Shown here in pieces: positions 1,438-58,971 of a DNA stretch of 64,000 nucleotides (within the stretch, counting starts at the first letter, position 1; each line of letters starts with the position of its first letter). The stretch lies in the IMG/VR virus record IMGVR_UViG_3300031521_001337, positions 1 through 64,000 of that record, one strand, 5' to 3'. The notes under the pieces were generated by a model that made no database searches, was not told the DNA's origin, and saw only the letters and a program-made list of their open reading frames with translations. A program made the translations under genes and the position numbers.

Positions 1438-1592
1438 CAAATGATACGCAAAAAATCTCAAATGATACGTCGGAATTTTCAAATGATACGCTCGAGTTTG
1501 TATGAAAACAGTTAAGTTATTGTGACACAGCGAATTACAAGGTTTCCATATACTTAATATATACTTAATAATTCTATACTTAATGTGGCTGT
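1438..1592 (+). repeat. 155-bp direct repeat copy 1 (iteron origin-like)
   Basis: Matches 34327-34481 with 2 mismatches. CAAATGATACG x3 at 21-bp spacing (1438, 1459, 1480) and TATACTTAAT x3 (1549, 1560, 1575). Confidence 0.95.
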
Positions 1593-1617
1593 ATTCAACA
1601 CATAACGGACTACAAAC

Positions 1618-1651
1618 AAAAAAGGCTGCTACATAATTGTAACAGCCTTTT
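1618..1651 (-). terminator. Intrinsic terminator after 1673..2296
   Basis: aaaaaggctg...cagcctttt hairpin. Confidence 0.7.
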
Positions 1652-1672
1652 AAATTTGGATTGATTTATTGA

Positions 1673-2296
1673 TTAGTCTTCTAATTCAATATCAATACTT
1701 GTATAATCTTCTGAATCTTCTGGATCAATATCATTACAATCAGTAGAATTACTAACTAAATATTTATTAATTAGATCATATTCTTTACTACCTCTTTCGC
1801 AATCTTGACTGATTGTCAACAATTTCTTTGCATCAAGTTCAGTTATATCTTTACCGATAACCAGTTCTGCTTCACGTCTTACTACTTCTCTAACTACTAT
1901 TTTAATTGTTTTACCTTCCATAATGTTGTTTGTTGTTTGTACTGTTTGGTCGTTTTCTTTACCAAATACTAAATTAATGTCGAAAATATCACCCTCTGCT
2001 AAAGAACTATATAATGCAGGTGGCATTATATTTCTACCAGTAATAGCTTTTAAGGCACTAATAAACTCATCTGACTTTGCTATTTCGTCTAAAATAGGTT
2101 GTAATAACGCTTCTAATTTAGGTGTAAATGTATGAGTACTTGTTAAGTATGTATTACTTATCATACCAGATATCATTGCACTCATTCTAATTTTATCTGA
2201 TTCCTCAGCTAAATTTTTAAAAACCATTTGTTTGATGTTTTTCTTAAAAACATCTTCTTGTCCAATTACAAAAATTTCACCCATAATATTAAGCAT
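1673..2296 (-). CDS. Hypothetical protein
   Basis: 207-aa ORF overlapping the upstream gene and followed by a terminator. Confidence 0.7.
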   Translation of the reverse strand: MLNIMGEIFVIGQEDVFKKNIKQMVFKNLAEESDKIRMSAMISGMISNTYLTSTHTFTPKLEALLQPILDEIAKSDEFISALKAITGRNIMPPALYSSLAEGDIFDINLVFGKENDQTVQTTNNIMEGKTIKIVVREVVRREAELVIGKDITELDAKKLLTISQDCERGSKEYDLINKYLVSNSTDCNDIDPEDSEDYTSIDIELED

Positions 2297-2582
2297 TTAA
2301 AAGGTTAATAATTTCTGCCTTCTCTTCTGCACTCATAGTACTTACAGAAGTCTTTAATGCTTCAATTCTTTGTGCTTTAATTTCGGCTTCTTTTTCAGCT
2401 TTCAATGCTGTTAAATTAGCTGTCCATTTCTCACACTTTTCAAGTTGTTCATCACACCTTTTTAGTAGCTCGTCAGATGTTAATAACTTACCAAATGAAG
2501 TACCATAAGAATCTATTGATTCTTTTCTCTGACCTACTTTTTTTACTTGTGCAGCATCTGCACTTTGAATATTTTTATTCAT
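2289..2582 (-). CDS. Hypothetical coiled-coil protein
   Basis: 97-aa ORF with a Bacteroidetes-type promoter upstream (TTTG-17nt-CACCTTTG, 2625-2653). Confidence 0.7.
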   Translation of the reverse strand: MNKNIQSADAAQVKKVGQRKESIDSYGTSFGKLLTSDELLKRCDEQLEKCEKWTANLTALKAEKEAEIKAQRIEALKTSVSTMSAEEKAEIINLLNA

Positions 2583-2694
2583 TTAAATAAAGCAATCTGT
2601 TTTAGTTTGTTTGTGATTGCGATACAAAGGTGCGACAATATGAAAAGCCCAAAAGTAATGGTTAAAATGGTCTAATTTACCTACCCCGCATTAA

Positions 2695-3564
2695 TTAATG
2701 CCACATAGCAGAATATTTATTAAATCTAAAGTCTTGTGTTTTGGTTTTAAACTCTCTATAACAGGACTTTAAATGTTCATCGCCATATAACCAATCTTCA
2801 TTATTATATATACCTGTAAGATATATTAATTTTGAAATAAAAGTAAATTTATTCAAAGATGCTATTTTATCTCCATTTTTAACAGGTTTATCTACAACAT
2901 ATTGTTTAAAGAAGTCAATCATTATTTTAGTGAATAGACAAATACGTGCATAATTTGGTGCATCTTTAGAATTACTTTCTTCAAGCTTAGCAGAATTTAA
3001 AACACTACCAGTTTTTAAACCGTTCAATTCCTCATCACATAACGAAGCCATTAAATAAATCGCTGTATTATTATCTATGACAATACTTTTTTTACCAATT
3101 TTCAACGTAATAGTAGCTTTCTGTTTAAATTCAATATCATTACCATTAATTTTACCTGTTGAATTATCATCTATAGCTTTTACAAATTTTTTCATTTGAC
3201 CAGCTGGACTTTCTTTTGCAACCAAACCACCTACACAATTAGTATATGCAAAATCAAATGCAAATAACAGAAAATACCAAAACTTTTTAGAATCTATATT
3301 AAACGCTTTTAATATGAGTTGTATATTTTTATCTTCTTCATCACCATTCATATAATCATTATAAGTAAAATTGGTTTTTATTGTACCTTGATTATAATTT
3401 TGCACAAAAGTATATAATCCATTCAATGAACACATTAACATACCATTTCCTTCAGCATCAAAATCTGCATCTGGAAGGTGCGTATAAACCATATTACATA
3501 CATATTCTAATAATGGTTCTTCTTCTATACAATCGTCTATATCAAACTGATCTACTACACTCAT
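2695..3564 (-). CDS. Hypothetical protein (standard code, TGG Trp only)
   Basis: Likely start MSVVDQF; TACTTTTG -7 element at 3583-3590. Confidence 0.7.
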   Translation of the reverse strand: MSVVDQFDIDDCIEEEPLLEYVCNMVYTHLPDADFDAEGNGMLMCSLNGLYTFVQNYNQGTIKTNFTYNDYMNGDEEDKNIQLILKAFNIDSKKFWYFLLFAFDFAYTNCVGGLVAKESPAGQMKKFVKAIDDNSTGKINGNDIEFKQKATITLKIGKKSIVIDNNTAIYLMASLCDEELNGLKTGSVLNSAKLEESNSKDAPNYARICLFTKIMIDFFKQYVVDKPVKNGDKIASLNKFTFISKLIYLTGIYNNEDWLYGDEHLKSCYREFKTKTQDFRFNKYSAMWH

Positions 3565-3590
3565 AATATTGTTATTTTTTGACAAAAGTA

Positions 3591-3625
3591 AAAAAAAGTC
3601 TGTAATCAACAAAGACTACAGACTT
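3591..3625 (-). terminator. Terminator closing the lysis cassette
   Basis: Minus strand aagtctgtagtc...gattacagacttttttt. Confidence 0.7.
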
Positions 3626-3630
3626 CAATA

Positions 3631-3837
3631 TTATTTACCAATCTTTTTATATTGGTAATCTACCCCAAACAAAGCACCTGCAAAGGTGCATATTTCCCCA
3701 AAGGCTACTAAAATACTGTTATGTATAACTCCAATGGGTACTACTCAAAAACCCATAAATAAAAGGCATATCCCAGCCAACACCAATACACAAGCTACTG
3801 CTAATTGTACGTTCAATTTTGTTTCTTTCAAATTCAT
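3631..3837 (-). CDS. Small two-TM holin-like protein (1 in-frame TGA=Trp); absent from ORF track
   Basis: MNLKETKLNVQLAVACVLVLAGICLLFMGF[W]VVPIGVIHNSILVAFGEICTFAGALFGVDYQYKKIGK; resembles Bacteroidetes phage lysis-cassette membrane proteins. Confidence 0.8.
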
Positions 3838-3858
3838 TACTTACTTTTTTATTTGTTT

Positions 3859-4452
3859 CTATTTTAACACCTTTATAAATCGAAAGTCTTTTACCTCTGA
3901 ATGAGGATTTAGTTCTTTCACTTCTATAACCTGTATTGTTTGTTTTTTCTGGAACAACCTTCACAAAAAGAATTTCTTTGGTGGTTTTATTGTTTCACGC
4001 TTATCATAAGTAATTGCTATTACTTCATTTCTTACTTTCAAATCTACATTAAGCGTATCTGGTGCTTTAAATTTCAAATCTAGGCTGTACCATTCATCAC
4101 CAGTTTTAGCTTCATAATCACGAATAAACACACTGTCTTTTAATGTTACAGTATCTTTTATTTGTGTTTGGGAATTTATAAAAACCGTTTCAGTTACCTT
4201 TTTAGGTTTAAGTTTTAATTCACCTATCAACGTTTTTACTTTTAAATCAGATGAATCTTTACTATCCTTCAAATCAGCTAAAGTAAATTGATAAACTACG
4301 TTCTTTCTAACTGATGCTTTATAGTTATTGGTAGCCGTTTTTAGCTCCTCATTCAGTTGTTTTGTGTGGTTATATGAAAACCACAATAAAACCCCACAAA
4401 TCAAAGCTATTGAAGCCAGCAGTATAATTAAATATTTCTTTATTGCTATCAT
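3859..4452 (-). CDS. DUF6549-like, spanin-like lysis protein (1 TGA=Trp)
   Basis: N-terminal TM plus coiled coil; read-through gives PPKKFFL[W]RLFQKKQTIQVIEVKELNPH, ending TAG at 3859. Confidence 0.75.
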
Positions 4453-4838
4453 TACGTTTTTATTAGTTGTTTCTTATTATCACCTTCTCTATATTCTATG
4501 TGAACTCAGGCAAAATTATGTTCATCTATCAACTGTCTAAACTCAAAATGTTCTTTTATTAGCTTATAAAGTAAAGCATTATCATCACAATCTAAATCAG
4601 CACAAGTACCTAATAAATGACCAGAAGTACTTACACCACCAACCGCTTTATTTACATCTGGACTTCTAAAACCGCTGTTAATTTTAATTGGTTTACCATA
4701 CAATTCCCTCAAAGGATCTAACACATTTGTAACTAATCTTTGCAGATTAGCTACTTGTGTTTCATTAGGAATATTTACTATCTTTTTATCTGTATGAACT
4801 AGTTCTTCATACGTGAATCATTTTGATACTATTTTCAT
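4452..4838 (-). CDS. Endolysin, peptidase M15A (2 TGA=Trp)
   Basis: LDPLRELYGKPIKINSGFRS, SGHLLGTCAD; read-through restores the catalytic [W]VHIEY motif. Confidence 0.9.
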
Positions 4839-4855
4839 ATTACATTTATTTGATA

Positions 4856-5890
4856 TTATTGTAATGGTGGTTGATTTGAAACGATAGCTGAGTAAGTTTG
4901 TGACCATCCATCATTATTAAAATTCACTCTATAATAGATTGTTGAACCTACAGAAAATTTTGATATTGCACTTGATAAATCAAAATATGCTGAGCCACTT
5001 TGTACTGATGTTCCTGGACTTGTAGTATTAGCATTACAAGTAGCTGATGTGTTAGTTAGGAACTCATTAGTAGTAAAATTAGAATCTGATGCAATTTCAA
5101 ATTTGATATTTACATTATTGTTTTGAACCCTCAAATCACCTAAAATATTTAATGATGCAATTATACCCGAATTACCTGTTTTTCTATATGCAAAGAAAGT
5201 CAAATCTGTATATCTCATTGAATTTGTCCAAGGGTCTGATGGTATTACTACAGAAAAAATATAACATTCACCATCTCCATTATTAGAGATTGCATCAATA
5301 CCACTTATCCATCTTCTATCGGGTGAACTCTTATGTACAACTTTAAACCAAGCTGTTGAACCAACAGTTAAAGCACTACCACCATCGGGTGGGCTTTGTG
5401 GGTTAATTTGAAATTGAAAATATGGGTAATATCCTGTTTGGTCACTTATCATTTTTACAAAGTTTGTATGTACAAAATCATTACCATATCTATTAAAATA
5501 TACATCAAAAGTATGAGCAATTGTAACAGGTGTTTTTGTGCTCATATCTTCTTTTGCATATACTATAGGTAATCTCATATATATAGGTGAATAATAATTT
5601 ATTGAATCGCTAGTTTTATACCCATTGTTTCCAGTGAACGTTATCCAGTTGTGGTCATAATTTCTAAAAACCCCAAGCGGATAACCTTGTTTTGGGAAAA
5701 CTGTTTGATTTTCATTTTGTCTTTGATATGGTGTTTTTCCAAAGTATGCAGATTGTTCTTTATAATCGGGACTATTAAAACCATATTCATTAACTAATGA
5801 ACTCAAACACAATGTTGATACATTATGAGTATTTAAACCTAGTTCTTGCCCTACTAATGTAGTAGTAATATTTGTTGATGGTAATGCCAT
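4856..5890 (-). CDS. Tail-associated protein
   Basis: MALPSTNITTTLVGQELG N-terminus typical of genes following Bacteroidetes phage fibres. Confidence 0.6.
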   Translation of the reverse strand: MALPSTNITTTLVGQELGLNTHNVSTLCLSSLVNEYGFNSPDYKEQSAYFGKTPYQRQNENQTVFPKQGYPLGVFRNYDHNWITFTGNNGYKTSDSINYYSPIYMRLPIVYAKEDMSTKTPVTIAHTFDVYFNRYGNDFVHTNFVKMISDQTGYYPYFQFQINPQSPPDGGSALTVGSTAWFKVVHKSSPDRRWISGIDAISNNGDGECYIFSVVIPSDPWTNSMRYTDLTFFAYRKTGNSGIIASLNILGDLRVQNNNVNIKFEIASDSNFTTNEFLTNTSATCNANTTSPGTSVQSGSAYFDLSSAISKFSVGSTIYYRVNFNNDGWSQTYSAIVSNQPPLQ

Positions 5891-5891
5891 A

Positions 5892-8800
5892 TTATTTATT
5901 TTTTAAAGTATTTATTTCTTGTGTTAGTTCTTGAATTGCTCCGATTAAATATGGTATTAACTTGATATAATCAACTGATAAAAATTCATCGTTATAAATG
6001 TTATGTACTAGGTTTGGAAGTACTTCTTTTAATTGCTGAGCAATAACACCAACATCTGTTTTTTCATCCTTATTTGGGTTTAATTCTTTAGCTTTTTCAT
6101 TCCAATTATATTGCACTGGATTTAATTTATTGATTACGTCCAAAGAATTATTTAATGGTTGAATGTTTTCTTTTAACCGTTCATCAGATGCACTATAAGC
6201 TACTATTTCACCCGCTGCTATTACATTTCCATTTGAAATAAAATTACTAGCAGTAACATTACCATTGAAATGAGAATTATCACTTCCATCAATATAAAAT
6301 GGAGTTGTACCATCGGAAGCATTTCTAATTGAAAATCCAGTGTTTGAAATTCCTTGTATTGAATTTTTAATATAGTATTGCTTAACTCCTGCTTGTGAAC
6401 CTTGTAATTGTATTCTTGCCTCACCTCCAACATCATTTCTAATTAGCACAGCACTTTTGTTAATTAGAGCAATATCACCTGTTCCACTTTCAGCACTAAT
6501 ATATACTGCATTGCCAGTAAACTGTAAGTAACCTTGTCTAACTGTATTTGCTGAATTATAACCACTCAAATAAGCGGCATCAGCAATCATTTTTATTCCC
6601 TCACCTGCATAAGTATTAACAGTTCCAGTTGCCATTAAAGTACCATTCACTGCCAACTTATACCCTTGGTCAGAAATATATCCAATCCCAGTATTACCAT
6701 TAGGGCTAATATAAAACCTCCCAATATCGGGTACTGTATTAGCACTTTGGGTTGATTGAGTAGTAATTGCAAAATCTCCATAAGACTGATAATCTGTATG
6801 TATGAACCATTTCCTAGAACTACCATTAGATACATTATGGTCAAATGATAACATTCCTACCCAACCTGAACCGCTAGGCAATGATAATCTTCCGTTAATT
6901 CCCATCCCACCATTAAGAACTAATGCTCCTGTTGATGGTGATAGTGATTGAGTTGTGTTTGGTATACTTACTACTCCATTACTTTCAATAGTCAATAAGG
7001 GAGTAGTTGCATAATTAAAAGTAAAGGCTTTGTTTCCCCACTGTCCAACAGAATTAAAAATCATTGACCCATAATTATCTCCACTACTAATAAAATAGTC
7101 AAAAGAAGAACCTGAACCAAATTTTAATTTACCTGAATAATTATTAGATGGTATATTAATAGCAAAATAATCACCTCTAGCTGATGCATTTGTCCCATCA
7201 TCACTTATCAAACTATTTACAAAATTACTCCCATTCCATTTAGGAATGTAGTTTGTTGATAAACTTGATAAATCTTGTGTAGCAATATTATTTACGCCAA
7301 TAAAATTTCTAATTTGAGTACTAGTAGCAGGACTCATTCTAGCATTAGGGGCATCGTATACCATTACATAACTTACCGTAGACGCAAAATCAGCGCCATA
7401 GTATTTTAAACCATTTACCATTTCAGCATTCAAATTCCCCACCATAGTAGTAGAATTTACAGTTAATGGTGCTGTTCCAGTTGCTACTGTTGATTGTAGT
7501 TGAGTTGCATTTACTGTAGAAGTAAAAGTTACTGCTCCTGTTTTACTTAACCTAAATCTTTCTGTATAAGTATGTGCAATAGCTTCTGTATTGTATGCTC
7601 TAGCATCAGAATAATCAATTACTAAATCAGTACCACTTCCACTGTATTTGTTGGCAATTCTATAAACTCTTTGGTCAGTTCCACCATCGGCATATAAGTA
7701 CATAGCACTACCATAATCAGAATCCAATGCTCTTAATTCAACACTATGATATGTTACACCAAATTTGCCTTTTCCATACGCTGTAACATCCCCACTAATC
7801 CACATATTTGCAGATTGTGCAGAGCTATTTTGGTTTAATATGTGGTCGTTATTGTTGGTATAAGCCGATGAACCTAGACCTAACCAAGATTGTATTTGAT
7901 TTTGTGTAAAATTATAAACATATCCGTTAGAGTAACCTCCTAGTAAATTAGTAGGTACGGATTGATTAGCAGTTCCATTATATACTGTTCCTAGTGTTAT
8001 ACTAGAGCCTAAAGTCCCACTAGAAGATACAAAGTCTCCAGTGTTACTACTGGCTGCTGAACCGAATGTTCTAGTAGGTAGTGGAGTATAACCTAAAGCA
8101 GTAGTAACCATTCCTGAGTTGATACCAGTTATCCATCCACCGTAGTTACCAAGATTATTATTAAATTGACTGAGATTAGTTGGAAAATCACTAACCTGCG
8201 ACTTAGTAATGCTTATGCCAGTAGATTTATTCCATGCAATAAATATAGGGTCAGTTTCAGTAAAACTAGATAAATAGTTATGTGTATGAGTAGTTATTAG
8301 TCCAGTAAGAACTCCTTCAACTTGGGATTTAGTTATACTAGAAATATAACCACTAGGATTTGTAGAATTATAGGGAGTGTATCCTAATGCTGTAGTAACT
8401 TGAGTTCCAGTTATACCAGTAAGATATCCATATCCAGTCCAAGGAGTACCAGTAACAAATGAACCATAATTACCTAAATCATTAGTAAATTGAGATAATA
8501 ATGTAGGTTTAGAAGTTATTTCTGAATAAGCGTAGCTTGGTTTTGTAGAAGCTTTAGCTCATGAATAAACATCACTAGCTGGTAAAGTTGTAGGATAATC
8601 TGGTAAACCATATCCACTAGTTGTGGTAGGATGGCTACCTGAGTATCAATATCCAACTGATGTTCATGGAGTTCCAGAAACATATGATGTATTATCATAA
8701 GTAATAGAAGTTCCAGACATTCTAACTAGACCAGTACCATTTAATTGAGCTTGAGCTCCAATATCTAATAAAGTTAATCCATGTGGATTACCGCTATTTA

Positions 8801-16171: not shown

Positions 16172-18224
16172 CTCTATTGTCTTTTGCTGGTATTATACCA
16201 TGATGTTTATAACCTTTATTATCTGTTCACCAACCTATGTTTTGGAATCCTTTACCTTCTACTTCTTTTGCTTCAGGACGTTTAACTGACATTTCTTCAT
16301 CACCAAGTTCACACATTCCCATTGCAGCTACGATATCAAAGTCTTTCTTTCCTTCATCCGTATAATCTAATAATTGATCAACCATATCTTTAAACGCCAT
16401 TGTACGGGAGTAATCCAAAATGTAATCATATATTAATTCACGATAATGTAGAATAACTTTAACTGTTGCAGGAGTTCCATACATTTGACTATTACCTTTA
16501 GATACATCAGGCATTGTAGACCTTGGTCTTTTCATTAATAGATGTAAATATTTTTTATCTCTAAAATAAGTAATAATAGCTGTTCTTGTTGATTCTAATA
16601 CAGCTTGACATCCATAATAAGTTAATAGTTTTGCTGCTGCATCGTAAGCTTCTCTAGGATCTTTAGGTCTGTCTTTATACATTGCTACATAAACAGGATC
16701 AGATTGTCCGAACACTCTTTTCTTTATAACAATACAAAATTCAGATCCTTTACCATCAGCACTTGCTGAATCAGCAGTACCAATATCAATAGAGTCAATT
16801 CCACCTACGTATAAGTTTTTATAATCTGTCCCTAATTCGGACATTAAAGGATGTTCTATAATTTGGATTTTTCCATCTTGTGCATCCTCTCTTCATTTAA
16901 CCCCATCTGCTCTATCATCTCCATCTCGTTTTCATACAAGATGTCCTGAATGTATTGTAGGAGTTGATTTGTAAATTTCTATTTGTGCAAGTTGTTCTGC
17001 AAGTTCTTCTCTAGGAAATAAATTATCAGCATGTTGTATAAGAGCTTCTTCAATAGTAAAACAATACTCTGACTTAAATTCTAGTAAATCCTTTGGACTA
17101 TTAACTAATTTAATTCTTTCTTGTTCATACCAATCTTTAGCTTTTTCTAAATTACATCATCCTCGTTTATCAACTAAATCATAAACAACTCTATAAGCTG
17201 GAATAAATAATCCACTTAATATGTATCTACCATCTCTAGTATAATTATGTTTAACAGGTAAAATATTATATGCAGTTGGATCATTTGTCATTCTTTTAAG
17301 TCCTTCCATAGAACTAGCTTTAGATGATCCACCTGTACCAAATGCAATCTTTCTACCAACGCGTTTACCTCCAAGTACTGTTATTAATGCAGTACCTTTA
17401 ACTCATTTTTTCATCAAAACAGGATCTGCTCCTGCTTCTTCGTAAATTAGAATTTGTGTTCTATCACCCCTTAACTTATCGGGTTCATCACATACTAATC
17501 CTTCTACTTCTGACTTATGACTGTCTGGCGCTTCACCACCATCTTTATCTTTCTTAGATGCTCTTTTATGAGTCTTAGAATTTGCTACCATTCTAACCCT
17601 TTTGAAAGCTCCTTCTGTATTTTCATTTAATCAATCCATTTGAATCCATATCTTATCAAGTGTTGGTTTCAAATGCTTTTCTGAAAACGTAGAAACTACT
17701 GAACGAAAGTTAGGAATTGTTGTATATGGTCTAGTTATAAAACTAGAAGCCATTTCCGAGAATCCGATACCACGACTTTTAAGTACTGAAGTATCTTTCT
17801 TTAATTTTTCACACATTTCCAAGTAATGGAAATATTCGTATTGAAAAACAAGAAACTCAGGAAATCCATAAGATTGATTAATTGTTTCTGAATCAGAAGA
17901 TTTAAGGTTATAAAAATTAATGAAGAAATAATTATCTCCAGTTATACGATAACCATTGACTTCATATCCTTCATTACATCTACGTATTCTTTCTTTCCAT
18001 CAATCTCTATGAGTTTTAGAACCCATAGGTATAGATGATGGACTATATCTACCTGTTTTTAATTTGTTAATTGCATCTTCTCTAAATCAATCAGGATTAA
18101 AGTCTAATGCATCAACATCATTAATAGGGCGATATTTAGTCATAAAGAAAGATTTATAACTATCGAAATATTCAATTTTATCATCTGGACCAAAATCTCA
18201 TGTTATTCCATCAAGTATTTTCAT
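16116..18224 (-). CDS. terL: Terminase large subunit, 702 aa, about 10 TGA=Trp
   Basis: One frame: YRITGDNYFFINFY, LKSRGIGFSE (Walker A region), RGDRTQILIYEEAG (Walker B), YVGGIDSID nuclease motif, FDIVAAMGM. Confidence 0.95.
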
Positions 18225-29996: not shown

Positions 29997-30014
29997 ATTT
30001 ATTCTATCATTTTG

Positions 30015-30087
30015 CACCCTTGGTAAGACTCGAACTCACACTTACAAATTTTGAAGATTTGTGTGCTAACCATTACACTACAAAGGT
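30015..30087 (-). tRNA. Opal suppressor tRNA, anticodon UCA (predicted Trp-charged)
   Basis: ACCTTTG TA GTGT AATGGTTA GCAC A CAAAT CT-TCA-AA ATTTG TAAGT GTGAG TTCGAGT CTTAC CAAGGGT G; full cloverleaf with A1-U72 and G73, short variable loop. Confidence 0.93.
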
Positions 30088-36100: not shown

Positions 36101-36169
36101 AACAATATATATTATTCATTTAAGTAATTTTGAACGTTGGTATTAGTCATTGTAAAATGATAACATACA

Positions 36170-36259
36170 ACTCAGCTAGAGAGAGTATAACATTGGTTTC
36201 CGATGAGATCTAGACGAAACGAGAGAATAAGAGGAAACTCTAAAACTCTCGTAAAACTC
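36170..36259 (+). ncRNA. Hammerhead ribozyme, pseudoknot type (U4C core variant)
   Basis: ACUC/GAGU hairpin; loop CUAGA pairs with loop II UCUAG; core CCGAUGA...GAAA; stem III CGAGAG/CUCUCG; GUA^ at 36253; stem I GUUU/AAAC. Confidence 0.7.
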
Positions 36260-36359
36260 AAAACACATATCACAATGAATAAAACTGTATATTTAGCATC
36301 ATCTAGTGATGCACGTCACACATTACACAAAGTTTATAAATCTTATAAACCAGGTAATA

Positions 36360-36635
36360 ATGGAAAAAATTAAGGTTGATTTCAAATCACAAACTTTAGA
36401 GATTATATCTAATATAACTGTAAAAGAGTTATTAGCTATTACAAATGCTGTTGATCTTTCAAGTTTTACAATAATTAGTTCAATAAATAAGCTTGAAATT
36501 ACAGGTGTTAGAACTGAATCTGAGAATATTATAATTCTTAAGAGTCTAGGTTATTATACAAATAAAGTAATTGCTGAAAAACTTGGATTAAGTGAACGAA
36601 CAGTTTATCGTAAACTAAAAGAATTAGGTATTTAA
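36360..36635 (+). CDS. HTH DNA-binding protein
   Basis: NKVIAEKLGLSERTVYRKLKELG. Confidence 0.7.
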   Translation: MEKIKVDFKSQTLEIISNITVKELLAITNAVDLSSFTIISSINKLEITGVRTESENIIILKSLGYYTNKVIAEKLGLSERTVYRKLKELGI

Positions 36636-36699: not shown

Positions 36700-36927
36700 A
36701 TGATAATAACAATTTATCTCATTGGAATTCCGTTATTCCCATTCATTATTATGCTTTTCACAAAGTTCTTTCCAAATGTTTTAGAATGTGATGATCCTGC
36801 TGATTATGCATTGGGTTATGGAATGATGTCATTATTTTGGCCATTTGTATTATTTGTTGCATCAATAGGTATAATCTATTATAAGTTTTATCAAATGATA
36901 AATACTATAGATAAACATAAAAAGTAG
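36700..36927 (+). CDS. Small membrane protein
   Basis: Two TM segments, SLFWP motif. Confidence 0.6.
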   Translation: MIITIYLIGIPLFPFIIMLFTKFFPNVLECDDPADYALGYGMMSLFWPFVLFVASIGIIYYKFYQMINTIDKHKK

Positions 36928-37201
36928 CAATACTCTCTCATAAACATAATTGAAAAAATCATTAGATCTGATGGTTTTTAGTACGGTACAGATATCCCGG
37001 GTTCAATTATGTTTACTTTCATAAAAGACTTATGATTTGATTAACCGTCGTCCGACGGTGTTGCATACGGTGCATAATAGTCCGGAGCCTATCATGAGTC
37101 TTTTTTACAATATACATTCCTCATCAGTCTGTATTTCTTTCTAATTATCATTATTTCTATCCCAACTATATTTAGTATTACAGTGATGTAAGAACAATAT
37201 G

Positions 37202-37279
37202 ACTCAGCCTAGGAGAGTATAACATCAGTTTCTGAAGAGACTAGGACGAAACGGGGAGCTCATCACTCCCGTCAAACTC
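37202..37279 (+). ncRNA. Hammerhead ribozyme, pseudoknot type
   Basis: CUGAAGA-G...C-GAAA core; pseudoknot CCUAG/CUAGG; stem III CGGGG/UCCCG; GUC^ at 37273; stem I GUUU/AAAC. Confidence 0.88.
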
Positions 37280-37294
37280 AAAAACTTATTTATT

Positions 37295-39135
37295 ATGATA
37301 ACATTAATCATTATTTATATTATTGGATTAATATTATGTCCAATATTATTACTTGTATTAGAATATAATTTTCCTGGTAGTATGTATTTAAATAACGGTC
37401 AAAATATCGGAGCATTTTTACAACATCATTAATTTGACCAATAGGTTTAATAATAATGGCAATATTTTTATTTGATCATATTGCATCTAATATTCATAAA
37501 AATTAATCAAATGCTAAACATAATATTAATTACAATCGTTATCATTTTAATAGTGGTAATGGTTGCAATTTTAGTAGCTCTTATAGTTGATGTATTTACA
37601 TACTTTAAATTACCAAAGATATGTATATTATATGGTATTATAATACTATTATTAATTGTTAACATTGCTATTCATTTAGAAAAATCAGTTTAAAATGAAA
37701 TTAAAAATCTTTATTATTAATATTGTTGTAGCAATAGTATTAATTGTTTCTTTTACTGCATGTAATTCTCAATCAAGAAGACATGCTCCAGTATTATCAA
37801 AAACTTACACAATAACTTACAAAGGATATCTTTCTGGTAAGTTTCTAAAACGTTCTACATTCATTAGTGCTCGTACTCCAATTGAAGCTGTACAAATACT
37901 TAAAGAACAAACGTTTGTTGGATTCGATAGTATTAGTGTTAACTCAATTAGACCTAAAGAATAATGATTAAAATTATTGTTAATATTATTGTAATAGTTT
38001 TGGTTATTATTCTTTTACGAGTATTAACATCTTGTGAAGCAAGAAGTGGGCATATGCATCAAGCTACAAAACCCACAATTGCTACACAAGTTGAATCAAT
38101 AACTAAACCAAAACATAAATTGGTTTACACATATTACATCACACACATTAAATCTCGGGATAAAATCAAGGTTTATGTGTATGATGATGATATAACATCG
38201 TACGAGTATCCAATTGATAAATTTAAAATCAAATAATCATGATAATATTATTATTACTTTTATTATGTTTCGATATATTTCTAACAAGAAAATATTATAT
38301 TGAAAAAGATCTTACAGGTGTATTACTTGGAGGTTTTGCGTGTGGATTTATAATGTGTGGGATTGTACTTATGTTGTGTATTAAGTTTCACATTCCATTA
38401 CAATAATCATGGTACTATTCTTATTAATTGTTGGATATTTATTATCCATTGTTCTGTGTAGTGTCTTATATAGAATTGCATCTCCGAAGTATTTAGATAT
38501 ATTTAGTAAATATGAAGCTGAATGTGATTTTATGTGGTTTATTCCTGGAATAAATACATTAATAGTGATATTTATGATTGGATTATTATTAATTGTTTTT
38601 ATCTGTATGTTATGCGATAAACTCATAAAAAGAGTTCGCTTTAATATCCGATTTAAATGGTTAGATAATTTCATCACCAAATTTAAAAATGAAGATCTAT
38701 AATGTTAACTAAAACTCAAGCAATAGTAATTTGTTTATCACCGTTCTTAATCTTCTATTTATTTGTAGAATTGTGTGCAATGTTTATATCAATAGAATGT
38801 AAAATCAAAAAACATGACTAAAACTGAAAAAACTCTATTATACATTGCACCATGGATTATCTTTTACTTGTTAGGTTCATTTATTGGACTACAATTCAAT
38901 ATTATCAAATGGCAAGAAGAATCACGAATGGGATATGTAATGCTTTCTTTACTTATTGATTGTGGAATATTAATGTTTAAATACATAAGCTAATGGTAAT
39001 TATACTCAGTCTATGTTTAGCATTTGATATATTTATGGGATTAATATGTTTTGATAAAGAAAATCATATTATGTCGCATTTATATGCTGCCGCAGCTGGA
39101 TTTTTATTAGCTGCAATTATTGTAAATATACTTTA
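37295..39135 (+). other. Cluster of small membrane and lipoprotein genes (e.g. 37695..37964, 37964..38236, 38409..38702)
   Basis: Tightly coupled short hydrophobic ORFs; lipobox-like FTAC and LTSC. Confidence 0.6.
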
Positions 39136-39139
39136 AACT

Positions 39140-39689
39140 CTTAGCATCAAGCAACTTTCATCAGATAAACGGTTGGATATGTATATTCTCTATATAATAA
39201 CGTTATAAATAATATAATCTCTTATATAAGAAGCATATCTGAATAACTAATCAAGAAGAGATTCAGTATGGTGGTTTGATGCCTTTAAACAGTATAATAC
39301 TAACTGCAAATAAGTATAATGAAAACCTGTGCGCAATCCTCCGATGAAAGTGTGGAACTTCCGAGTGTAAGGTATAACGGCTATATGTACAAATAGCATC
39401 CATTCTGTCAATCCTTGAAGACAAATTAATAAAAGATAGGTATACTAAAACCGATGCCGTGCTAATTGCTGGTGTCAAAAACAAGCCAACGTAATATCGT
39501 CCTGAAACTGGCTATGGGAGCAAAAGGGTGAAGCTCTTTATTACGAAAGAATGCTTCCCGGTTAGATTCACCGATTTTATCGGTGATGTACCGCGAAGTA
39601 AACAATGGTTATCATATTAATTTTGATAACAAACACTAAGGGAGTACACATCGTCGCATTTGGACATATAGTGTGTACTCTCTTTTTTA
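39140..39689 (+). ncRNA. Candidate large structured ncRNA (about 550 nt)
   Basis: No credible ORF; crossing 9-bp helices 39144-52/39274-82 and 39154-62/39343-51; several hairpins; ends in a terminator. Confidence 0.55.
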
Positions 39690-39692
39690 TTA

Positions 39693-39761
39693 ACTCAACC
39701 AGTAGAGTATAAAATAGTTTCTGATGAGACTGGACGAAATATGTTTAAACATATCAAACTC
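39693..39761 (+). ncRNA. Hammerhead ribozyme, pseudoknot type
   Basis: CUGAUGA-G...C-GAAA; pseudoknot CCAGU/ACUGG; stem III hairpin UAUGUUU-AAACAUA; AUC^ at 39755. Confidence 0.9.
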
Positions 39762-39777
39762 AAAAACAAATAAGATT

Positions 39778-39954
39778 ATGTCAAAAACTAAATCAATCAT
39801 CGCCATAACAGGTAACAATGTAAAAGTAGAAATAATATCAGGTTTAACTCCAAGACAAGCAGCTTATCAAAGAAGAGAGCTTGCTACATCCGAAGAAAAC
39901 TTTGATATGTTAGGTAAAACATGTGCAATTTATCGTACTAAAACTTGTAAGTAA
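39778..39954 (+). CDS. Small hypothetical protein downstream of ribozyme
   Basis: Start MSKTKSII; the track start at 39724 falls inside the ribozyme core. Confidence 0.6.
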   Translation: MSKTKSIIAITGNNVKVEIISGLTPRQAAYQRRELATSEENFDMLGKTCAIYRTKTCK

Positions 39955-40374
39955 TGAAACTATTTAAAGCTATTGCTATTGTAATAATGTGTGTGTCAGT
40001 TGGATTATTTATCTTAACACTATTTAAATAATGCATATCACATTCGAACCCGCATTTGGAGTATTGTTGATTGTTATCGCTCATACAATAATAACCCATT
40101 TATTTAATTGGTTACATCGTGTCGTACTTAAAGAATTCGAGATTTTCGTAATATTTATAGGATTATTTCATTTTTGTGAAGTAATGTTTGTATTTGCTAT
40201 GTTAACCGGTCTTTATTTAAAGTAAACTCTTTCGAGTTTCCAAACCATAGAAATATGGGGAGGAAACTCTTTTAATCTAATTAGTGTGTAAGATAGGTAC
40301 ATTAGGTGTACGCGCTACAGTTGGTAATTCTTATAAAAGGTGCAACCTTTCACACTTATTTCAAAACTTAAAAT

Positions 40375-40683
40375 ATGAATAAAATTACATTAAATAAAAG
40401 TTATGAATGTGATATATTAATTAGAGTATATGAATCACAAAATCCAAATGTACCTGAAAGTGATCAAATTGTAGGTGAAGTTTTATTTAAAGATAAACCT
40501 CATATTAGAGCATCTGCTTGGCTTCCAAAAGGTATTGCTGAATTTATAAATTCTGAACTATTAAAAATAGAAGATAAAAATTATAATATTCATATTTCTA
40601 ATGAATTACCATATCAAGTTGGAGTTCTCACTTCATGTAAAGAAAATTTTGATTTATATATGAATAAATTATTAAATAAATAA
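40375..40683 (+). CDS. Hypothetical protein
   Basis: 102-aa ORF with A-rich leader. Confidence 0.6.
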   Translation: MNKITLNKSYECDILIRVYESQNPNVPESDQIVGEVLFKDKPHIRASAWLPKGIAEFINSELLKIEDKNYNIHISNELPYQVGVLTSCKENFDLYMNKLLNK

Positions 40684-41267: not shown

Positions 41268-41303
41268 AAACGCAGCGGTTATAACGTCCGCTGCGTTTTT
41301 ATT
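41268..41303 (+). terminator. Terminator-like hairpin directly before hammerhead
   Basis: aaacgcagcgg...ccgctgcgttttt. Confidence 0.75.
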
Positions 41304-41305
41304 CA

Positions 41306-41370
41306 CCTCATCCAGAAGAGGCTAAAAAGTTTACTGAAGAGGCTGGACGAAACACATTATGTATAAACTC
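41306..41370 (+). ncRNA. Hammerhead ribozyme, pseudoknot type
   Basis: CCUC/GAGG hairpin; pseudoknot UCCAG/CUGGA; CUGAAGA...GAAA; short stem III; GUA^ at 41363; stem I GUUUA/UAAAC. Confidence 0.82.
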
Positions 41371-41532
41371 AAAACAAATTAAAAATGGAAAAAACTATTG
41401 TATTATCCGAAGTGGTTACTAAACACAAAAAGGTTAAAGCAGGTAAAATATTAACCTCATCTCAAAATGAAAAGCAAATTATGCGTAAAGCATGGAATGC
41501 AAAGTCTGATACTTTAATATCTTACAAGTAAA

Positions 41533-53951: not shown

Positions 53952-54037
53952 TTGGATATAGCTCAGCCTGGTTAGAGCGTCGGCAGCAAGACAAAAACAT
54001 TAGCCGGAGGTCGGAGGTTCAAATCCTTTTATCCATA
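53952..54037 (+). ncRNA. tRNA-like RNA with an 18-nt anticodon loop
   Basis: Canonical D arm, T arm and acceptor; stem TCGGC/GCCGG encloses AGCAAGACAAAAACATTA. Confidence 0.75.
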
Positions 54038-58908: not shown

Positions 58909-58971
58909 ACTCCACTAAGGGAGTATAAAGTTATTAAGCTTAGTGCGTTACACAATTCGTGTAGGTTAAAC
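58909..58971 (+). ncRNA. Pistol ribozyme
   Basis: P1 ACUCC/GGAGU; loop ACUAAG pairs with CUUAGU; AUAAA; UUAAG; GCG; P3 UUACAC/GUGUAG; G^U site at 58965/58966. Confidence 0.88.

What the first reader, a model, noticed from the sequence alone, without database searches (positions are those of the whole stretch)
39140..39689. Candidate 550-nt pseudoknotted ncRNA
This is a long non-coding gap in a gene-dense arm, and its 3' part is richer in GC than the flanks. Two 9-bp long-range helices cross (GCATCAAGC/GTTTGATGC and ACTTTCATC/GATGAAAGT). Further hairpins lie near 39569-39587 and 39608-39630. A terminator and a hammerhead define its 3' end. The size is in the range of large phage ncRNAs such as ROOL or GOLLD, but I cannot assign a class.
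Basis: partly seen in the sequence, partly recalled or inferred. Interest (0 to 1): 0.65.

Follow-up and report, generated by a model that had tools for sequence, protein, structure and literature searches.

The report
Structured phage RNA before a hammerhead
A 213-kb phage from peat carries a conserved, intricately folded non-coding RNA (a 370-base core, about 555 bases with its 5' extension) that matches no catalogued RNA family, ends in a terminator and sits just before a self-cleaving hammerhead ribozyme; its function is unknown.

Summary

Relatives recovered from wastewater and other metagenomes (three to four lineages, 75-80% identical) share a 370-nt core, 39322-39691. It alternates invariant blocks with hairpins whose sequences change while pairing is kept. 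Of 84 consensus pairs, 96-99% of cells are paired and 23 pairs show compensatory changes. Controls with the 3' partner slid by 1-3 columns ("slid controls") give 25-51% paired and 0-4 such pairs.

The core ends in an intrinsic terminator (39638-39688), 3 nt before a RAGATH-1 hammerhead (39692-39760).

The 5' part (39137-39321) is a separable module. It resembles the 3' half of Rfam RAGATH-7 far below threshold. One lineage lacks most of it, and in another it is split from the core by 325 nt.

Both 9-bp helices exist. Helix 1 plausibly closes the 5' module. Helix 2, and so the pseudoknot, has no comparative support, and such helices are expected by chance.

No Rfam family, ROOL or GOLLD included, matches the core. 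Expression and function are untested. It is a new family of the ribozyme-associated phage ncRNA kind, confined to one phage clade.

The parts
39137..39321 (+). 5' module. It has conserved end blocks, a long AT-rich hairpin of variable sequence (about 39173-39241) and a small hairpin at 39246-39267. It is present in the window phage, L088 and group B. Lineage C lacks it apart from the terminal hairpin.
   Evidence: Alignment and RNAalifold of six sequences. Single-sequence MFE folds of the window phage and group B give the same architecture although the central sequence differs. Weak colinear match to RAGATH-7: 19.6 bits here and up to 33.1 bits in relatives, against a gathering score of 111.8.
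39144..39152 (+). It pairs with 39274-39282.
   Evidence: 9 bp. It closes the 5' module in the RNAalifold consensus of six sequences. The only change is G-U to G-C, so no compensatory change is seen.
39274..39282 (+). 3' arm of helix 1. Alternatively it forms a local hairpin, GGY / UUGAU / GCC.
   Evidence: The cmscan alignment to RAGATH-7 places a hairpin at this spot. The T-to-C change at 39275 in L088 and group B fits both pairings.
39154..39162 (+). It pairs with 39343-39351 in the apical part of H3.
   Evidence: 9 Watson-Crick bp, present in the MFE fold of the 555 nt. The arm is absent in lineage C and lies over 500 nt from its partner in L074. No covariation.
39287..39320 (+). RAGATH-7-like terminal hairpin: conserved AAACAGU, a 4-6 bp stem and the loop UAACUGMAAAUAA.
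   Evidence: One compensatory pair, AUAC/GUAU against ACAC/GUGU. It matches RAGATH-7 model positions 174-208 in every relative, occurs twice in L074, and is also present in lineage C. The phage genome has a single copy.
39322..39444 (+). Core domain 1. P1 (39325-39330 with 39436-39441) encloses H3 (39337-39341 / 39363-39367), H4 (39380-39384 / 39393-39397) and H5 (39406-39409 / 39420-39423). An extra hairpin, H2, is present in groups B and C and is exactly deleted in this phage.
   Evidence: Model R1 and the count of structure pairs: 98.7% of cells paired, 3 pairs with changes on both sides, slid controls 30-40% paired with none.
39453..39476 (+). H6, a hairpin with the conserved loop UAAUU and a variable stem.
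   Evidence: Seven different hairpin sequences among nine relatives, all of which fold. Four pairs have changes on both sides.
39484..39537 (+). H7 (39484-39488 / 39509-39513, inner 39489-39491 / 39498-39500) and H8 (39517-39521 / 39533-39537), with long invariant unpaired stretches.
   Evidence: H7 has one A-U to U-A swap in lineage C. H8 is invariant and therefore untested.
39554..39598 (+). H10, a three-tier hairpin made of outer CUUC/GAAG, a middle stem and an inner hairpin.
   Evidence: The same three-tier shape forms in all lineages from different sequences. Six of 14 pairs have changes on both sides.
39608..39630 (+). H11, a 7-bp hairpin.
   Evidence: U-A to C-G swap and a U-G wobble.
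39638..39688 (+). H12, an intrinsic terminator: a long stem followed by the U-run 39683-39688.
   Evidence: Three different stem versions (window phage, L088, groups B/C) all pair. Eight of 15 pairs have changes on both sides. The simple terminator scan missed it because its loop is long.
39692..39760 (+). RAGATH-1 hammerhead ribozyme. Cleavage is predicted after C39755, leaving a 22-nt leader before ATG 39778.
   Evidence: Rfam 67.6 bits against a gathering score of 56.3. It is 99-100% identical in relatives. The cleavage site is inferred from the model alignment.
39778..39954 (+). 58-aa gene that follows the RNA and hammerhead in every relative.
   Evidence: No Pfam or PHROG match. AlphaFold model has pLDDT 76 and no significant PDB fold match.

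Best explanation
The gap encodes a previously uncatalogued structured non-coding RNA, transcribed rightward like the flanking genes.

Its conserved unit is a 370-nt core (39322-39691). The core comprises a multi-helix junction domain (P1, H3-H5), four further hairpin elements (H6, H7/H8, H10, H11) with long invariant loops and joining strands, and a terminal intrinsic terminator that makes its 3' end. In this phage, a separable module resembling RAGATH-7 (39137-39321) precedes the core, giving about 555 nt.

Inferred steps:
- The RNA is made either from its own start near 39320 or as the 3' part of the operon segment released by the upstream hammerhead (37201-37278).
- Most transcripts stop at the terminator.
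- Polymerases that read through are dealt with by the hammerhead 3 nt downstream. It cuts after C39755 and frees the next mRNA with a short A-rich leader.
- The invariant unpaired nucleotides suggest a compact tertiary fold or a bound partner, so the RNA probably acts in trans as a folded RNA or RNP.

Its biochemical role is not known.
For: Non-coding:
- No ORF under three genetic codes.
- 1-2-nt indels among relatives.

Conservation:
- Eight further distinct versions were found in metagenome assemblies: L064, L065, L068, L079, L081 and L074 (group B), L069 (lineage C) and L088.
- Core identity is 75-80%, similar to the neighbouring genes, but it is mosaic: invariant blocks alternate with variable hairpins.

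Structure:
- Model R1: 98.7% of cells paired, 3 pairs with changes on both sides.
- Model R3: 96.1% paired, 5 such pairs against 1.4 in shuffles.
- Model R2: 97.8% paired, 15 of 36 pairs against 3.8 +/- 1.5 in shuffles, reached by 0 of 500 shuffles.
- Slid controls give 25-51% paired and 0-4 such pairs.
- H6, H10 and the terminator fold alike from different sequences.
- Hairpin H2 is cleanly deleted in this phage.

Strand:
- Many conserved G-U pairs, which would be A-C mismatches on the other strand.
- The U-run and the hammerhead also point to the + strand.
- z = -3.53 on the + strand against -2.08 on the - strand.

Modularity:
- L088 has about 130 nt inserted between terminator and hammerhead.
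- L074 has 325 nt between the 5' module and the core.
- A terminator also abuts the hammerhead at 41305-41368, with no structured RNA before it. The terminator-hammerhead pair is therefore a generic unit of this arm.
Against: - No expression data. No listed run holding the stretch is on record as RNA, and the runs guessed to be RNA gave only contigs and are probably DNA.
- No promoter was identified. Sigma-70-like matches are no more frequent than in shuffles.
- Only three to four lineages are available, and the pair counts were made on alignments fitted to the models. The covariation is suggestive, not statistically proven.
- Many core helices (H4, H8, the apical part of H3) never vary and so are untested.
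- The RNA always precedes the same gene in the same orientation, which also fits a cis-acting leader.
- The function is pure inference.
Confidence: 0.6

Rival explanations
1. Cis-acting leader. The RNA is a large 5' regulatory element (riboswitch-like, protein-binding or antitermination type) whose terminator gates transcription into the hammerhead and the 58-aa gene operon. The hammerhead then removes the leader from the mRNA.
For: - The RNA lies upstream of the same gene, in the same orientation, in all lineages.
- The terminator sits 3 nt before a ribozyme that can act only if transcribed, so read-through must occur.
- In nascent-transcript folds of L088, group B and L074, the 5' arm of the terminator pairs with the invariant AAGGGUGAAGCUCUUU block, which would form an antiterminator.
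Against: - That alternative pairing is no stronger than a typical best duplex (about -8 kcal/mol). It sits at a different place in this phage and shows no covariation.
- L088 has about 130 nt inserted between terminator and hammerhead.
- The same terminator-hammerhead arrangement occurs at 41270-41368 without any structured RNA.
- About 300 nt is very large for an aptamer.
Confidence: 0.2
2. This is one 550-nt RNA whose global fold is set by two crossing long-range 9-bp helices (a pseudoknot), comparable to ROOL or GOLLD.
For: - Both helices exist.
- Helix 2 appears in the MFE and centroid folds of the 555 nt.
- Helix 1 closes the 5' module in the RNAalifold consensus and keeps pairing through a G-U to G-C change.
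- The arms are conserved in the window phage, L088 and group B, while the sequence between them diverges.
Against: - Such helices and crossings are expected by chance.
- Lineage C lacks both 5' arms, yet the 3' arm of helix 2 stays invariant there.
- L074 has 325 nt inserted between the modules.
- Neither helix shows a compensatory change.
- The 3' arm of helix 1 has a competing local hairpin.
- ROOL and GOLLD models do not match.
Confidence: 0.12
3. A new ribozyme. The invariant junctions and loops form an active site, for self-cleavage or another reaction, as for the pistol, hatchet and twister-sister ribozymes that were found near hammerheads.
For: - The RNA lies in an arm with four hammerheads, in a phage that also carries a pistol ribozyme.
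- It has long invariant unpaired stretches within a multi-helix fold.
Against: - At 370 nt it is far larger than known self-cleaving classes.
- A terminator directly at the 3' end was judged at odds with self-cleavage for comparable motifs (PMC5737381).
- No activity data exist.
Confidence: 0.06
4. Not an RNA. The region is a DNA-level element (origin, packaging or protein-binding site) or a decayed gene.
For: It is an intergenic, GC-richer island in a 27% GC genome.
Against: - Pairing is kept through strand-specific G-U wobbles and compensatory changes.
- The hairpin plus U-run geometry is oriented as a terminator.
- No frame is conserved.
Confidence: 0.02

Closest known systems
RAGATH-7 RNA (Rfam RF03159)
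   Same: - The 80-100 nt just upstream of the core align colinearly with model positions 115-208 in every relative.
- The shared features are an AACUAA box, a small hairpin, a GGC..GCC hairpin and a terminal hairpin with a nearly identical loop (UAACUGAAMAAUAA) preceded by ACAGU.
- Like RAGATH motifs, it sits next to a hammerhead.
   Different: - Scores are 18-33 bits against a gathering score of 111.8.
- The 5' half of the model is not matched convincingly.
- The 370-nt core has no counterpart in the model.
- The function of RAGATH-7 is itself unknown.
Complex bacterial or phage motifs followed by terminators (DUF3800-I, drum, FuFi-1, skipping-rope; Weinberg et al. 2017, PMC5737381)
   Same: These are multi-helix RNAs with highly conserved unpaired nucleotides, followed by a Rho-independent terminator. 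They were judged unlikely to be riboswitches or self-cleavers and are of unknown biochemical function.
   Different: There is no sequence or model match. This RNA is larger, and it is tied to a hammerhead array in one jumbo-phage clade rather than to a protein domain.
ROOL and GOLLD large phage-associated ncRNAs
   Same: They are phage-borne, hundreds of nucleotides long, built of many helices, and of unknown function.
   Different: No Rfam hit even at E up to 10. The RNA is not next to tRNA genes; the nearest is about 9 kb away. The conserved core is only 370 nt. The typical size and tRNA linkage of ROOL and GOLLD are from my own knowledge.
Transcription-attenuating leaders (riboswitches, T-box)
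   Same: A structured RNA is followed by an intrinsic terminator upstream of a conserved gene.
   Different: No supported antiterminator was found. A ribozyme and, in L088, 130 extra nt lie between terminator and gene. A chance resemblance of GUACCGCG in H10 to the T-box sequence is limited to this phage and L074 and lies in a covarying stem. The T-box consensus is from my own knowledge, and no T-box match appeared in the Rfam scan.

Membership tests
ROOL (RF03087) / GOLLD (RF01998) | Match to the family covariance model at or above its gathering score | tested here: not met
   The cmscan of 36900-40400 at E up to 10 lists only two hammerheads and a weak RAGATH-7 match. The whole-window gathering scan gives the same picture.
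ROOL (RF03087) / GOLLD (RF01998) | Frequent adjacency to tRNA genes in phage or prophage DNA (own knowledge) | tested here: not met
   The nearest tRNAs are at 30015-30087 and 53952-54037. The phage's tRNA cluster lies at about 77-89 kb.
RAGATH-7 (RF03159) | Score at or above the gathering threshold of 111.8 bits over the full 208-position model | tested here: not met
   19.6 bits in the window. 18-29 bits in relatives. 33.1 bits for L079, covering model positions 115-208 only.
RAGATH-7 (RF03159) | Terminal hairpin with the conserved loop UAACUGAACAAUAA, preceded by ACAGU | tested here: met
   Present at 39287-39320 and in all relatives, twice in L074, with one compensatory stem change.
RAGATH-1 hammerhead (RF03152), the flanking element | Covariance-model score at or above 56.3 bits with an intact catalytic core (CUGAUGA ... 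GAAA) | tested here: met
   67.6 bits at 39692-39760, with the core motifs intact in the alignment. Self-cleavage itself was not tested.
Intrinsic (Rho-independent) terminator | Stable GC-containing stem immediately followed by a U-run, on the transcribed strand | tested here: met
   A stem of 11 or more bp within 39638-39684, then six U at 39683-39688. Three sequence versions keep the stem. Termination activity was not tested.
Riboswitch / attenuator leader | Mutually exclusive terminator and antiterminator pairings conserved across homologs | tested here: inconclusive
   A candidate antiterminator appears in L088, group B and L074 but not in this phage, at chance-level energy.
Structured ncRNA (general criterion) | Base pairs maintained by compensatory substitutions across homologs | tested here: met
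   23 of 84 consensus pairs have changes on both sides and 96-99% of cells are paired. Shuffled and slid controls are far lower. Caveats: three to four lineages, and alignments fitted to the models.
Structured ncRNA (general criterion) | A discrete transcript exists | not testable with these tools
   No listed run holding the stretch is on record as RNA. The runs guessed to be RNA were served only as contigs, are probably DNA, and span several genes.

The most novel reading that the evidence does not exclude
The 370-nt core is a new class of large functional RNA, for example a ribozyme or a self-assembling RNP scaffold. In this reading its invariant loops make tertiary contacts. One candidate is a 6-bp kissing interaction between the H5 loop (AUCCUU, 39411-39416) and the H8 loop (AAGGGU, 39524-39529). 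The phage would use the RNA during early infection. The RAGATH-7-like hairpin would be a shared docking or processing signal that links it to other ribozyme-associated RNAs.
Probability: 0.15. Interest if true: 0.8.

Novelty: new member of a known kind. Interest (0 to 1): 0.55.

Why it matters
Large, intricately folded bacterial and phage RNAs of unknown function are rare. Past examples have led to new biochemistry: ribozymes, RNA-guided nucleases derived from RAGATH-18 (PMC11061315), and RNA cages.

This one adds a well-delimited 370-nt fold with a clear 3' end. It has a partial link to RAGATH-7. It also sits in an unusually regular setting, an arm of a jumbo phage cut into segments by four hammerheads. 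Two of these hammerheads sit directly after intrinsic terminators.

That arrangement gives a testable model for what phage hammerheads do. They may resolve terminator read-through into separate RNAs with defined ends.

The family is narrow, confined to one phage clade, and its host is unknown. This limits immediate impact.

Tried and rejected
- **Phage GenBank collection.** blastn in distant mode found no match.
- **IMG/VR.** A protein-anchored search and three pattern scans found only identical copies of the same phage. Two chance coding hits (L072, L073) were discarded.
- **Other hammerhead loci.** I fetched 50 loci with the RAGATH-1 hammerhead core. Neither nhmmer (single sequence or profile) nor covariance model R1 found the core there or elsewhere in the phage genome. 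The best stray hit was 24 bits, E 0.07, at 17672-17795.
- **JGI metagenomes.** The scan found only the same phage and its variant L088.
- **GTDB genomes.** The scan found nothing.
- **Distant relatives.** Relatives of the neighbouring 162-aa gene (L075-L078, 41-49% identity) have neither the RNA nor hammerheads.
- **Promoter idea for the RAGATH-7-like hairpin.** It is single-copy in the genome, so it is not a recurrent phage promoter.
- **Alternative genetic codes.** I checked code 4 and TAG=Q only because the phage has a tRNA with anticodon UCA. Neither opens a frame.
- **Neighbouring proteins.** Pfam and PHROGs gave nothing informative. The only hits were an HTH protein at 36306-36635 and an unknown-function PHROG family for the 162-aa protein.
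- **The 58-aa protein.** The AlphaFold model has pLDDT 76 and no significant PDB fold match.
- **Antiterminator search.** No pairing was conserved across lineages.
- **T-box resemblance.** Rejected (see Closest known systems).
- **Steps not used.** The big representative protein search and complex prediction were not needed.

Full report
**Setting.** The window is the first 64 kb of a 213,486-bp IMG/VR virus record. The phage has about 27% GC, its own tmRNA and about 20 tRNA genes. Near-identical DNA is held by 20 peat-metagenome runs.

The finding lies in a rightward arm of small genes of unknown function. Rfam places RAGATH-1 hammerheads at 37201-37278 and 39692-39760, and a pistol ribozyme at 58909-58970. 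A lower-threshold search adds hammerheads at 36169-36239 (36 bits) and 41305-41368 (50 bits). All four are on the + strand, and each lies about 20 nt before an ORF start.

**Checking the observation.**
- The gap 39137-39691 has no + strand ORF over 35 aa under code 11. The same holds under code 4 and TAG=Q, which I tried because the phage has a tRNA with anticodon UCA.
- GC rises to 0.38-0.41 in the 3' two thirds of the gap.
- The two 9-bp helices are present at 39144-39152 / 39274-39282 and 39154-39162 / 39343-39351, and they cross.
- Dinucleotide shuffles give 2.6 such helices on average, and a crossing pair in 45% of cases. They are not evidence on their own.
- The MFE z-score is -2.78 for the 555 nt. 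For the core alone it is -3.53 on the + strand and -2.08 on the - strand.

**Finding relatives.**
- Public phage genomes and IMG/VR hold only identical copies.
- Laying contigs of four runs showed relatives about 85-90% identical in wastewater runs. These cover 39244-39404 and 39483-39954 but not 38776-39243.
- I reached their DNA through exact look-ups of homologs of the downstream 58-aa and 162-aa proteins. A JGI pattern scan gave the variant L088.
- With the window this gives nine distinct versions of the core, in three to four lineages: the window phage plus L088; group B (L064, L065, L068, L079, L081, and the mosaic L074); and lineage C (L069).

**What is conserved.**
- All lineages share a core from AAAACCU (39322) to the terminator.
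- Invariant blocks of 12-50 nt alternate with short variable segments. There are many 1- and 2-nt indels, which excludes coding.
- Overall core identity is 75-80%, like the neighbouring genes. The hammerhead is 99-100% identical.
- The 5' 185 nt are conserved only in the window phage, L088 and group B.
- Lineage C has a different AT-rich spacer there. L074 has 325 extra nt between the 5' module and the core. L088 has about 130 extra nt between the terminator and the hammerhead.
- The RNA core, the 5' module and the hammerhead-gene unit are therefore separable modules.

**Structure of the core.** RNAalifold and hand inspection give the following elements.
- **Domain 1** is closed by P1 and contains H3, H4 and H5. 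Groups B and C also have H2, which is cleanly deleted in this phage.
- **H6** has the conserved loop UAAUU.
- **H7** has an inner 3-bp stem.
- **H8** is invariant.
- **H10** is a three-tier hairpin.
- **H11** is a 7-bp hairpin.
- **H12** is the terminator.

I built three covariance models without typing any structure, aligned all relatives to them, and counted pairs.

| Model | Region | Cells paired | Pairs changed on both sides | Controls |
|---|---|---|---|---|
| R1 | domain 1 | 98.7% | 3 of 25 | slid: 30-40% paired, 0 pairs |
| R3 | H6-H8 | 96.1% | 5 of 23 | shuffles: 1.4; slid: 0-2 |
| R2 | H10-H12 | 97.8% | 15 of 36 | shuffles: 3.8 +/- 1.5, reached by 0 of 500; slid: 1-4 |

Conserved G-U pairs and the U-run fix the + strand as the folded one.

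Caveats: the lineages are few, the alignments are fitted to the models, and several helices never vary.

- In both this phage and group B, single-sequence MFE folds give the same plan. Helix 1 closes a module that holds a long AT-rich hairpin of unrelated sequence, a small hairpin, and a terminal hairpin. The RNAalifold consensus agrees on helix 1 and the two small hairpins.
- Helix 1 shows only a G-U to G-C change. Its 3' arm can also form the local hairpin that RAGATH-7 has at that place.
- Helix 2 links the module to the apical part of H3. Its 3' arm is invariant even in lineage C, which lacks the 5' arm, and nothing covaries.
- The pseudoknot is therefore unproven.
- Rfam's RAGATH-7 matches the 3' half of the module in every relative at 18-33 bits, against a gathering score of 111.8. 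It matches twice in L074 and once in lineage C. This is a partial resemblance, not membership.

**How it probably works.**
- Shown: a conserved folded RNA, a conserved terminator, and an adjacent hammerhead.
- Inferred: the RNA is a stable product ending at the terminator.
- Inferred: because the hammerhead starts 3 nt after the U-run, it can only be made by read-through. It would then cut after C39755 and release the downstream mRNA with a short A-rich leader.
- The same terminator-hammerhead-ORF unit at 41270-41385 has no structured RNA before it. This argues that the terminator is not a dedicated expression platform of this RNA.
- A cis-regulatory reading remains possible. A candidate antiterminator exists in some lineages but is at chance level.
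- The neighbouring proteins gave no clue.

**Comparison and novelty.**
- No Rfam 15 family matches the core.
- No homolog was found beside 50 other RAGATH-1 hammerheads, elsewhere in the phage, in GTDB genomes, or in more distant relatives of the phage.
- The nearest analogues in kind are the RAGATH motifs and the terminator-ended complex motifs of Weinberg et al. 2017 (PMC5737381). One RAGATH motif later proved to be a guide-RNA scaffold (PMC11061315).
- I file it as a new family of a known kind. Expression and function are untested.

Noticed in passing
window 36169-36239, 37201-37278, 39692-39760, 41305-41368 (all +): An array of four RAGATH-1 hammerheads 1.0-2.5 kb apart. Each lies about 20 nt before an ORF start, and each predicted 3' product begins AAACUCAAAA(A)C. 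Relatives carry three or four such ribozymes per 5-8 kb. Two of the four (39692, 41305) directly follow intrinsic terminators.
   Followed up: partly
window 37020-37112 (+): A branched GC-rich element: a 14-bp outer stem enclosing two small hairpins, then a U-run. It lies about 90 nt upstream of the hammerhead at 37201. Part of it (37053-37093) matches other phage contigs (L026:7393-7433, L059) at a similar distance from their hammerheads (nhmmer E 7.5e-4).
   Followed up: partly
window 58909-58970 (+): Pistol ribozyme (Rfam 41.6 bits against a gathering score of 34.5) in the same phage.
   Followed up: no
window 30014-30087 (-): A tRNA with anticodon UCA, called tRNA-SeC by ARAGORN. It may be a UGA suppressor. 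Standard code 11 still gives long ORFs throughout the window, so recoding is not evident here.
   Followed up: partly
G000 68160-68568 and about 76.9-88.8 kb (L004, L005): A phage-encoded tmRNA (107 bits) and a cluster of about 18 tRNA genes.
   Followed up: no
G000 1592-8180 = 206898-213486; also 182881-184825: A 6.6-kb stretch near the start of the record is repeated at its very end (99.9% identity). A 1.9-kb part of it occurs a third time. The record may carry a terminal redundancy or an assembly overlap, so the unique genome is nearer 205 kb.
   Followed up: partly
L074:2641-2964; L069:1810-1916: A further shared non-coding module, an AT-rich hairpin around GUUCAGCUACAAACGAGUAUUGUUUGGG. 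It follows the RAGATH-7-like hairpin in lineage C and in the L074 insertion. This suggests that these non-coding modules are shuffled by recombination at the shared hairpin.
   Followed up: no
window 37295-39136 (+): Eight or so tiny ORFs (39-97 aa) between the two hammerheads. Those whose translations I read look hydrophobic, like small membrane proteins. Their number and identity differ between lineages.
   Followed up: no
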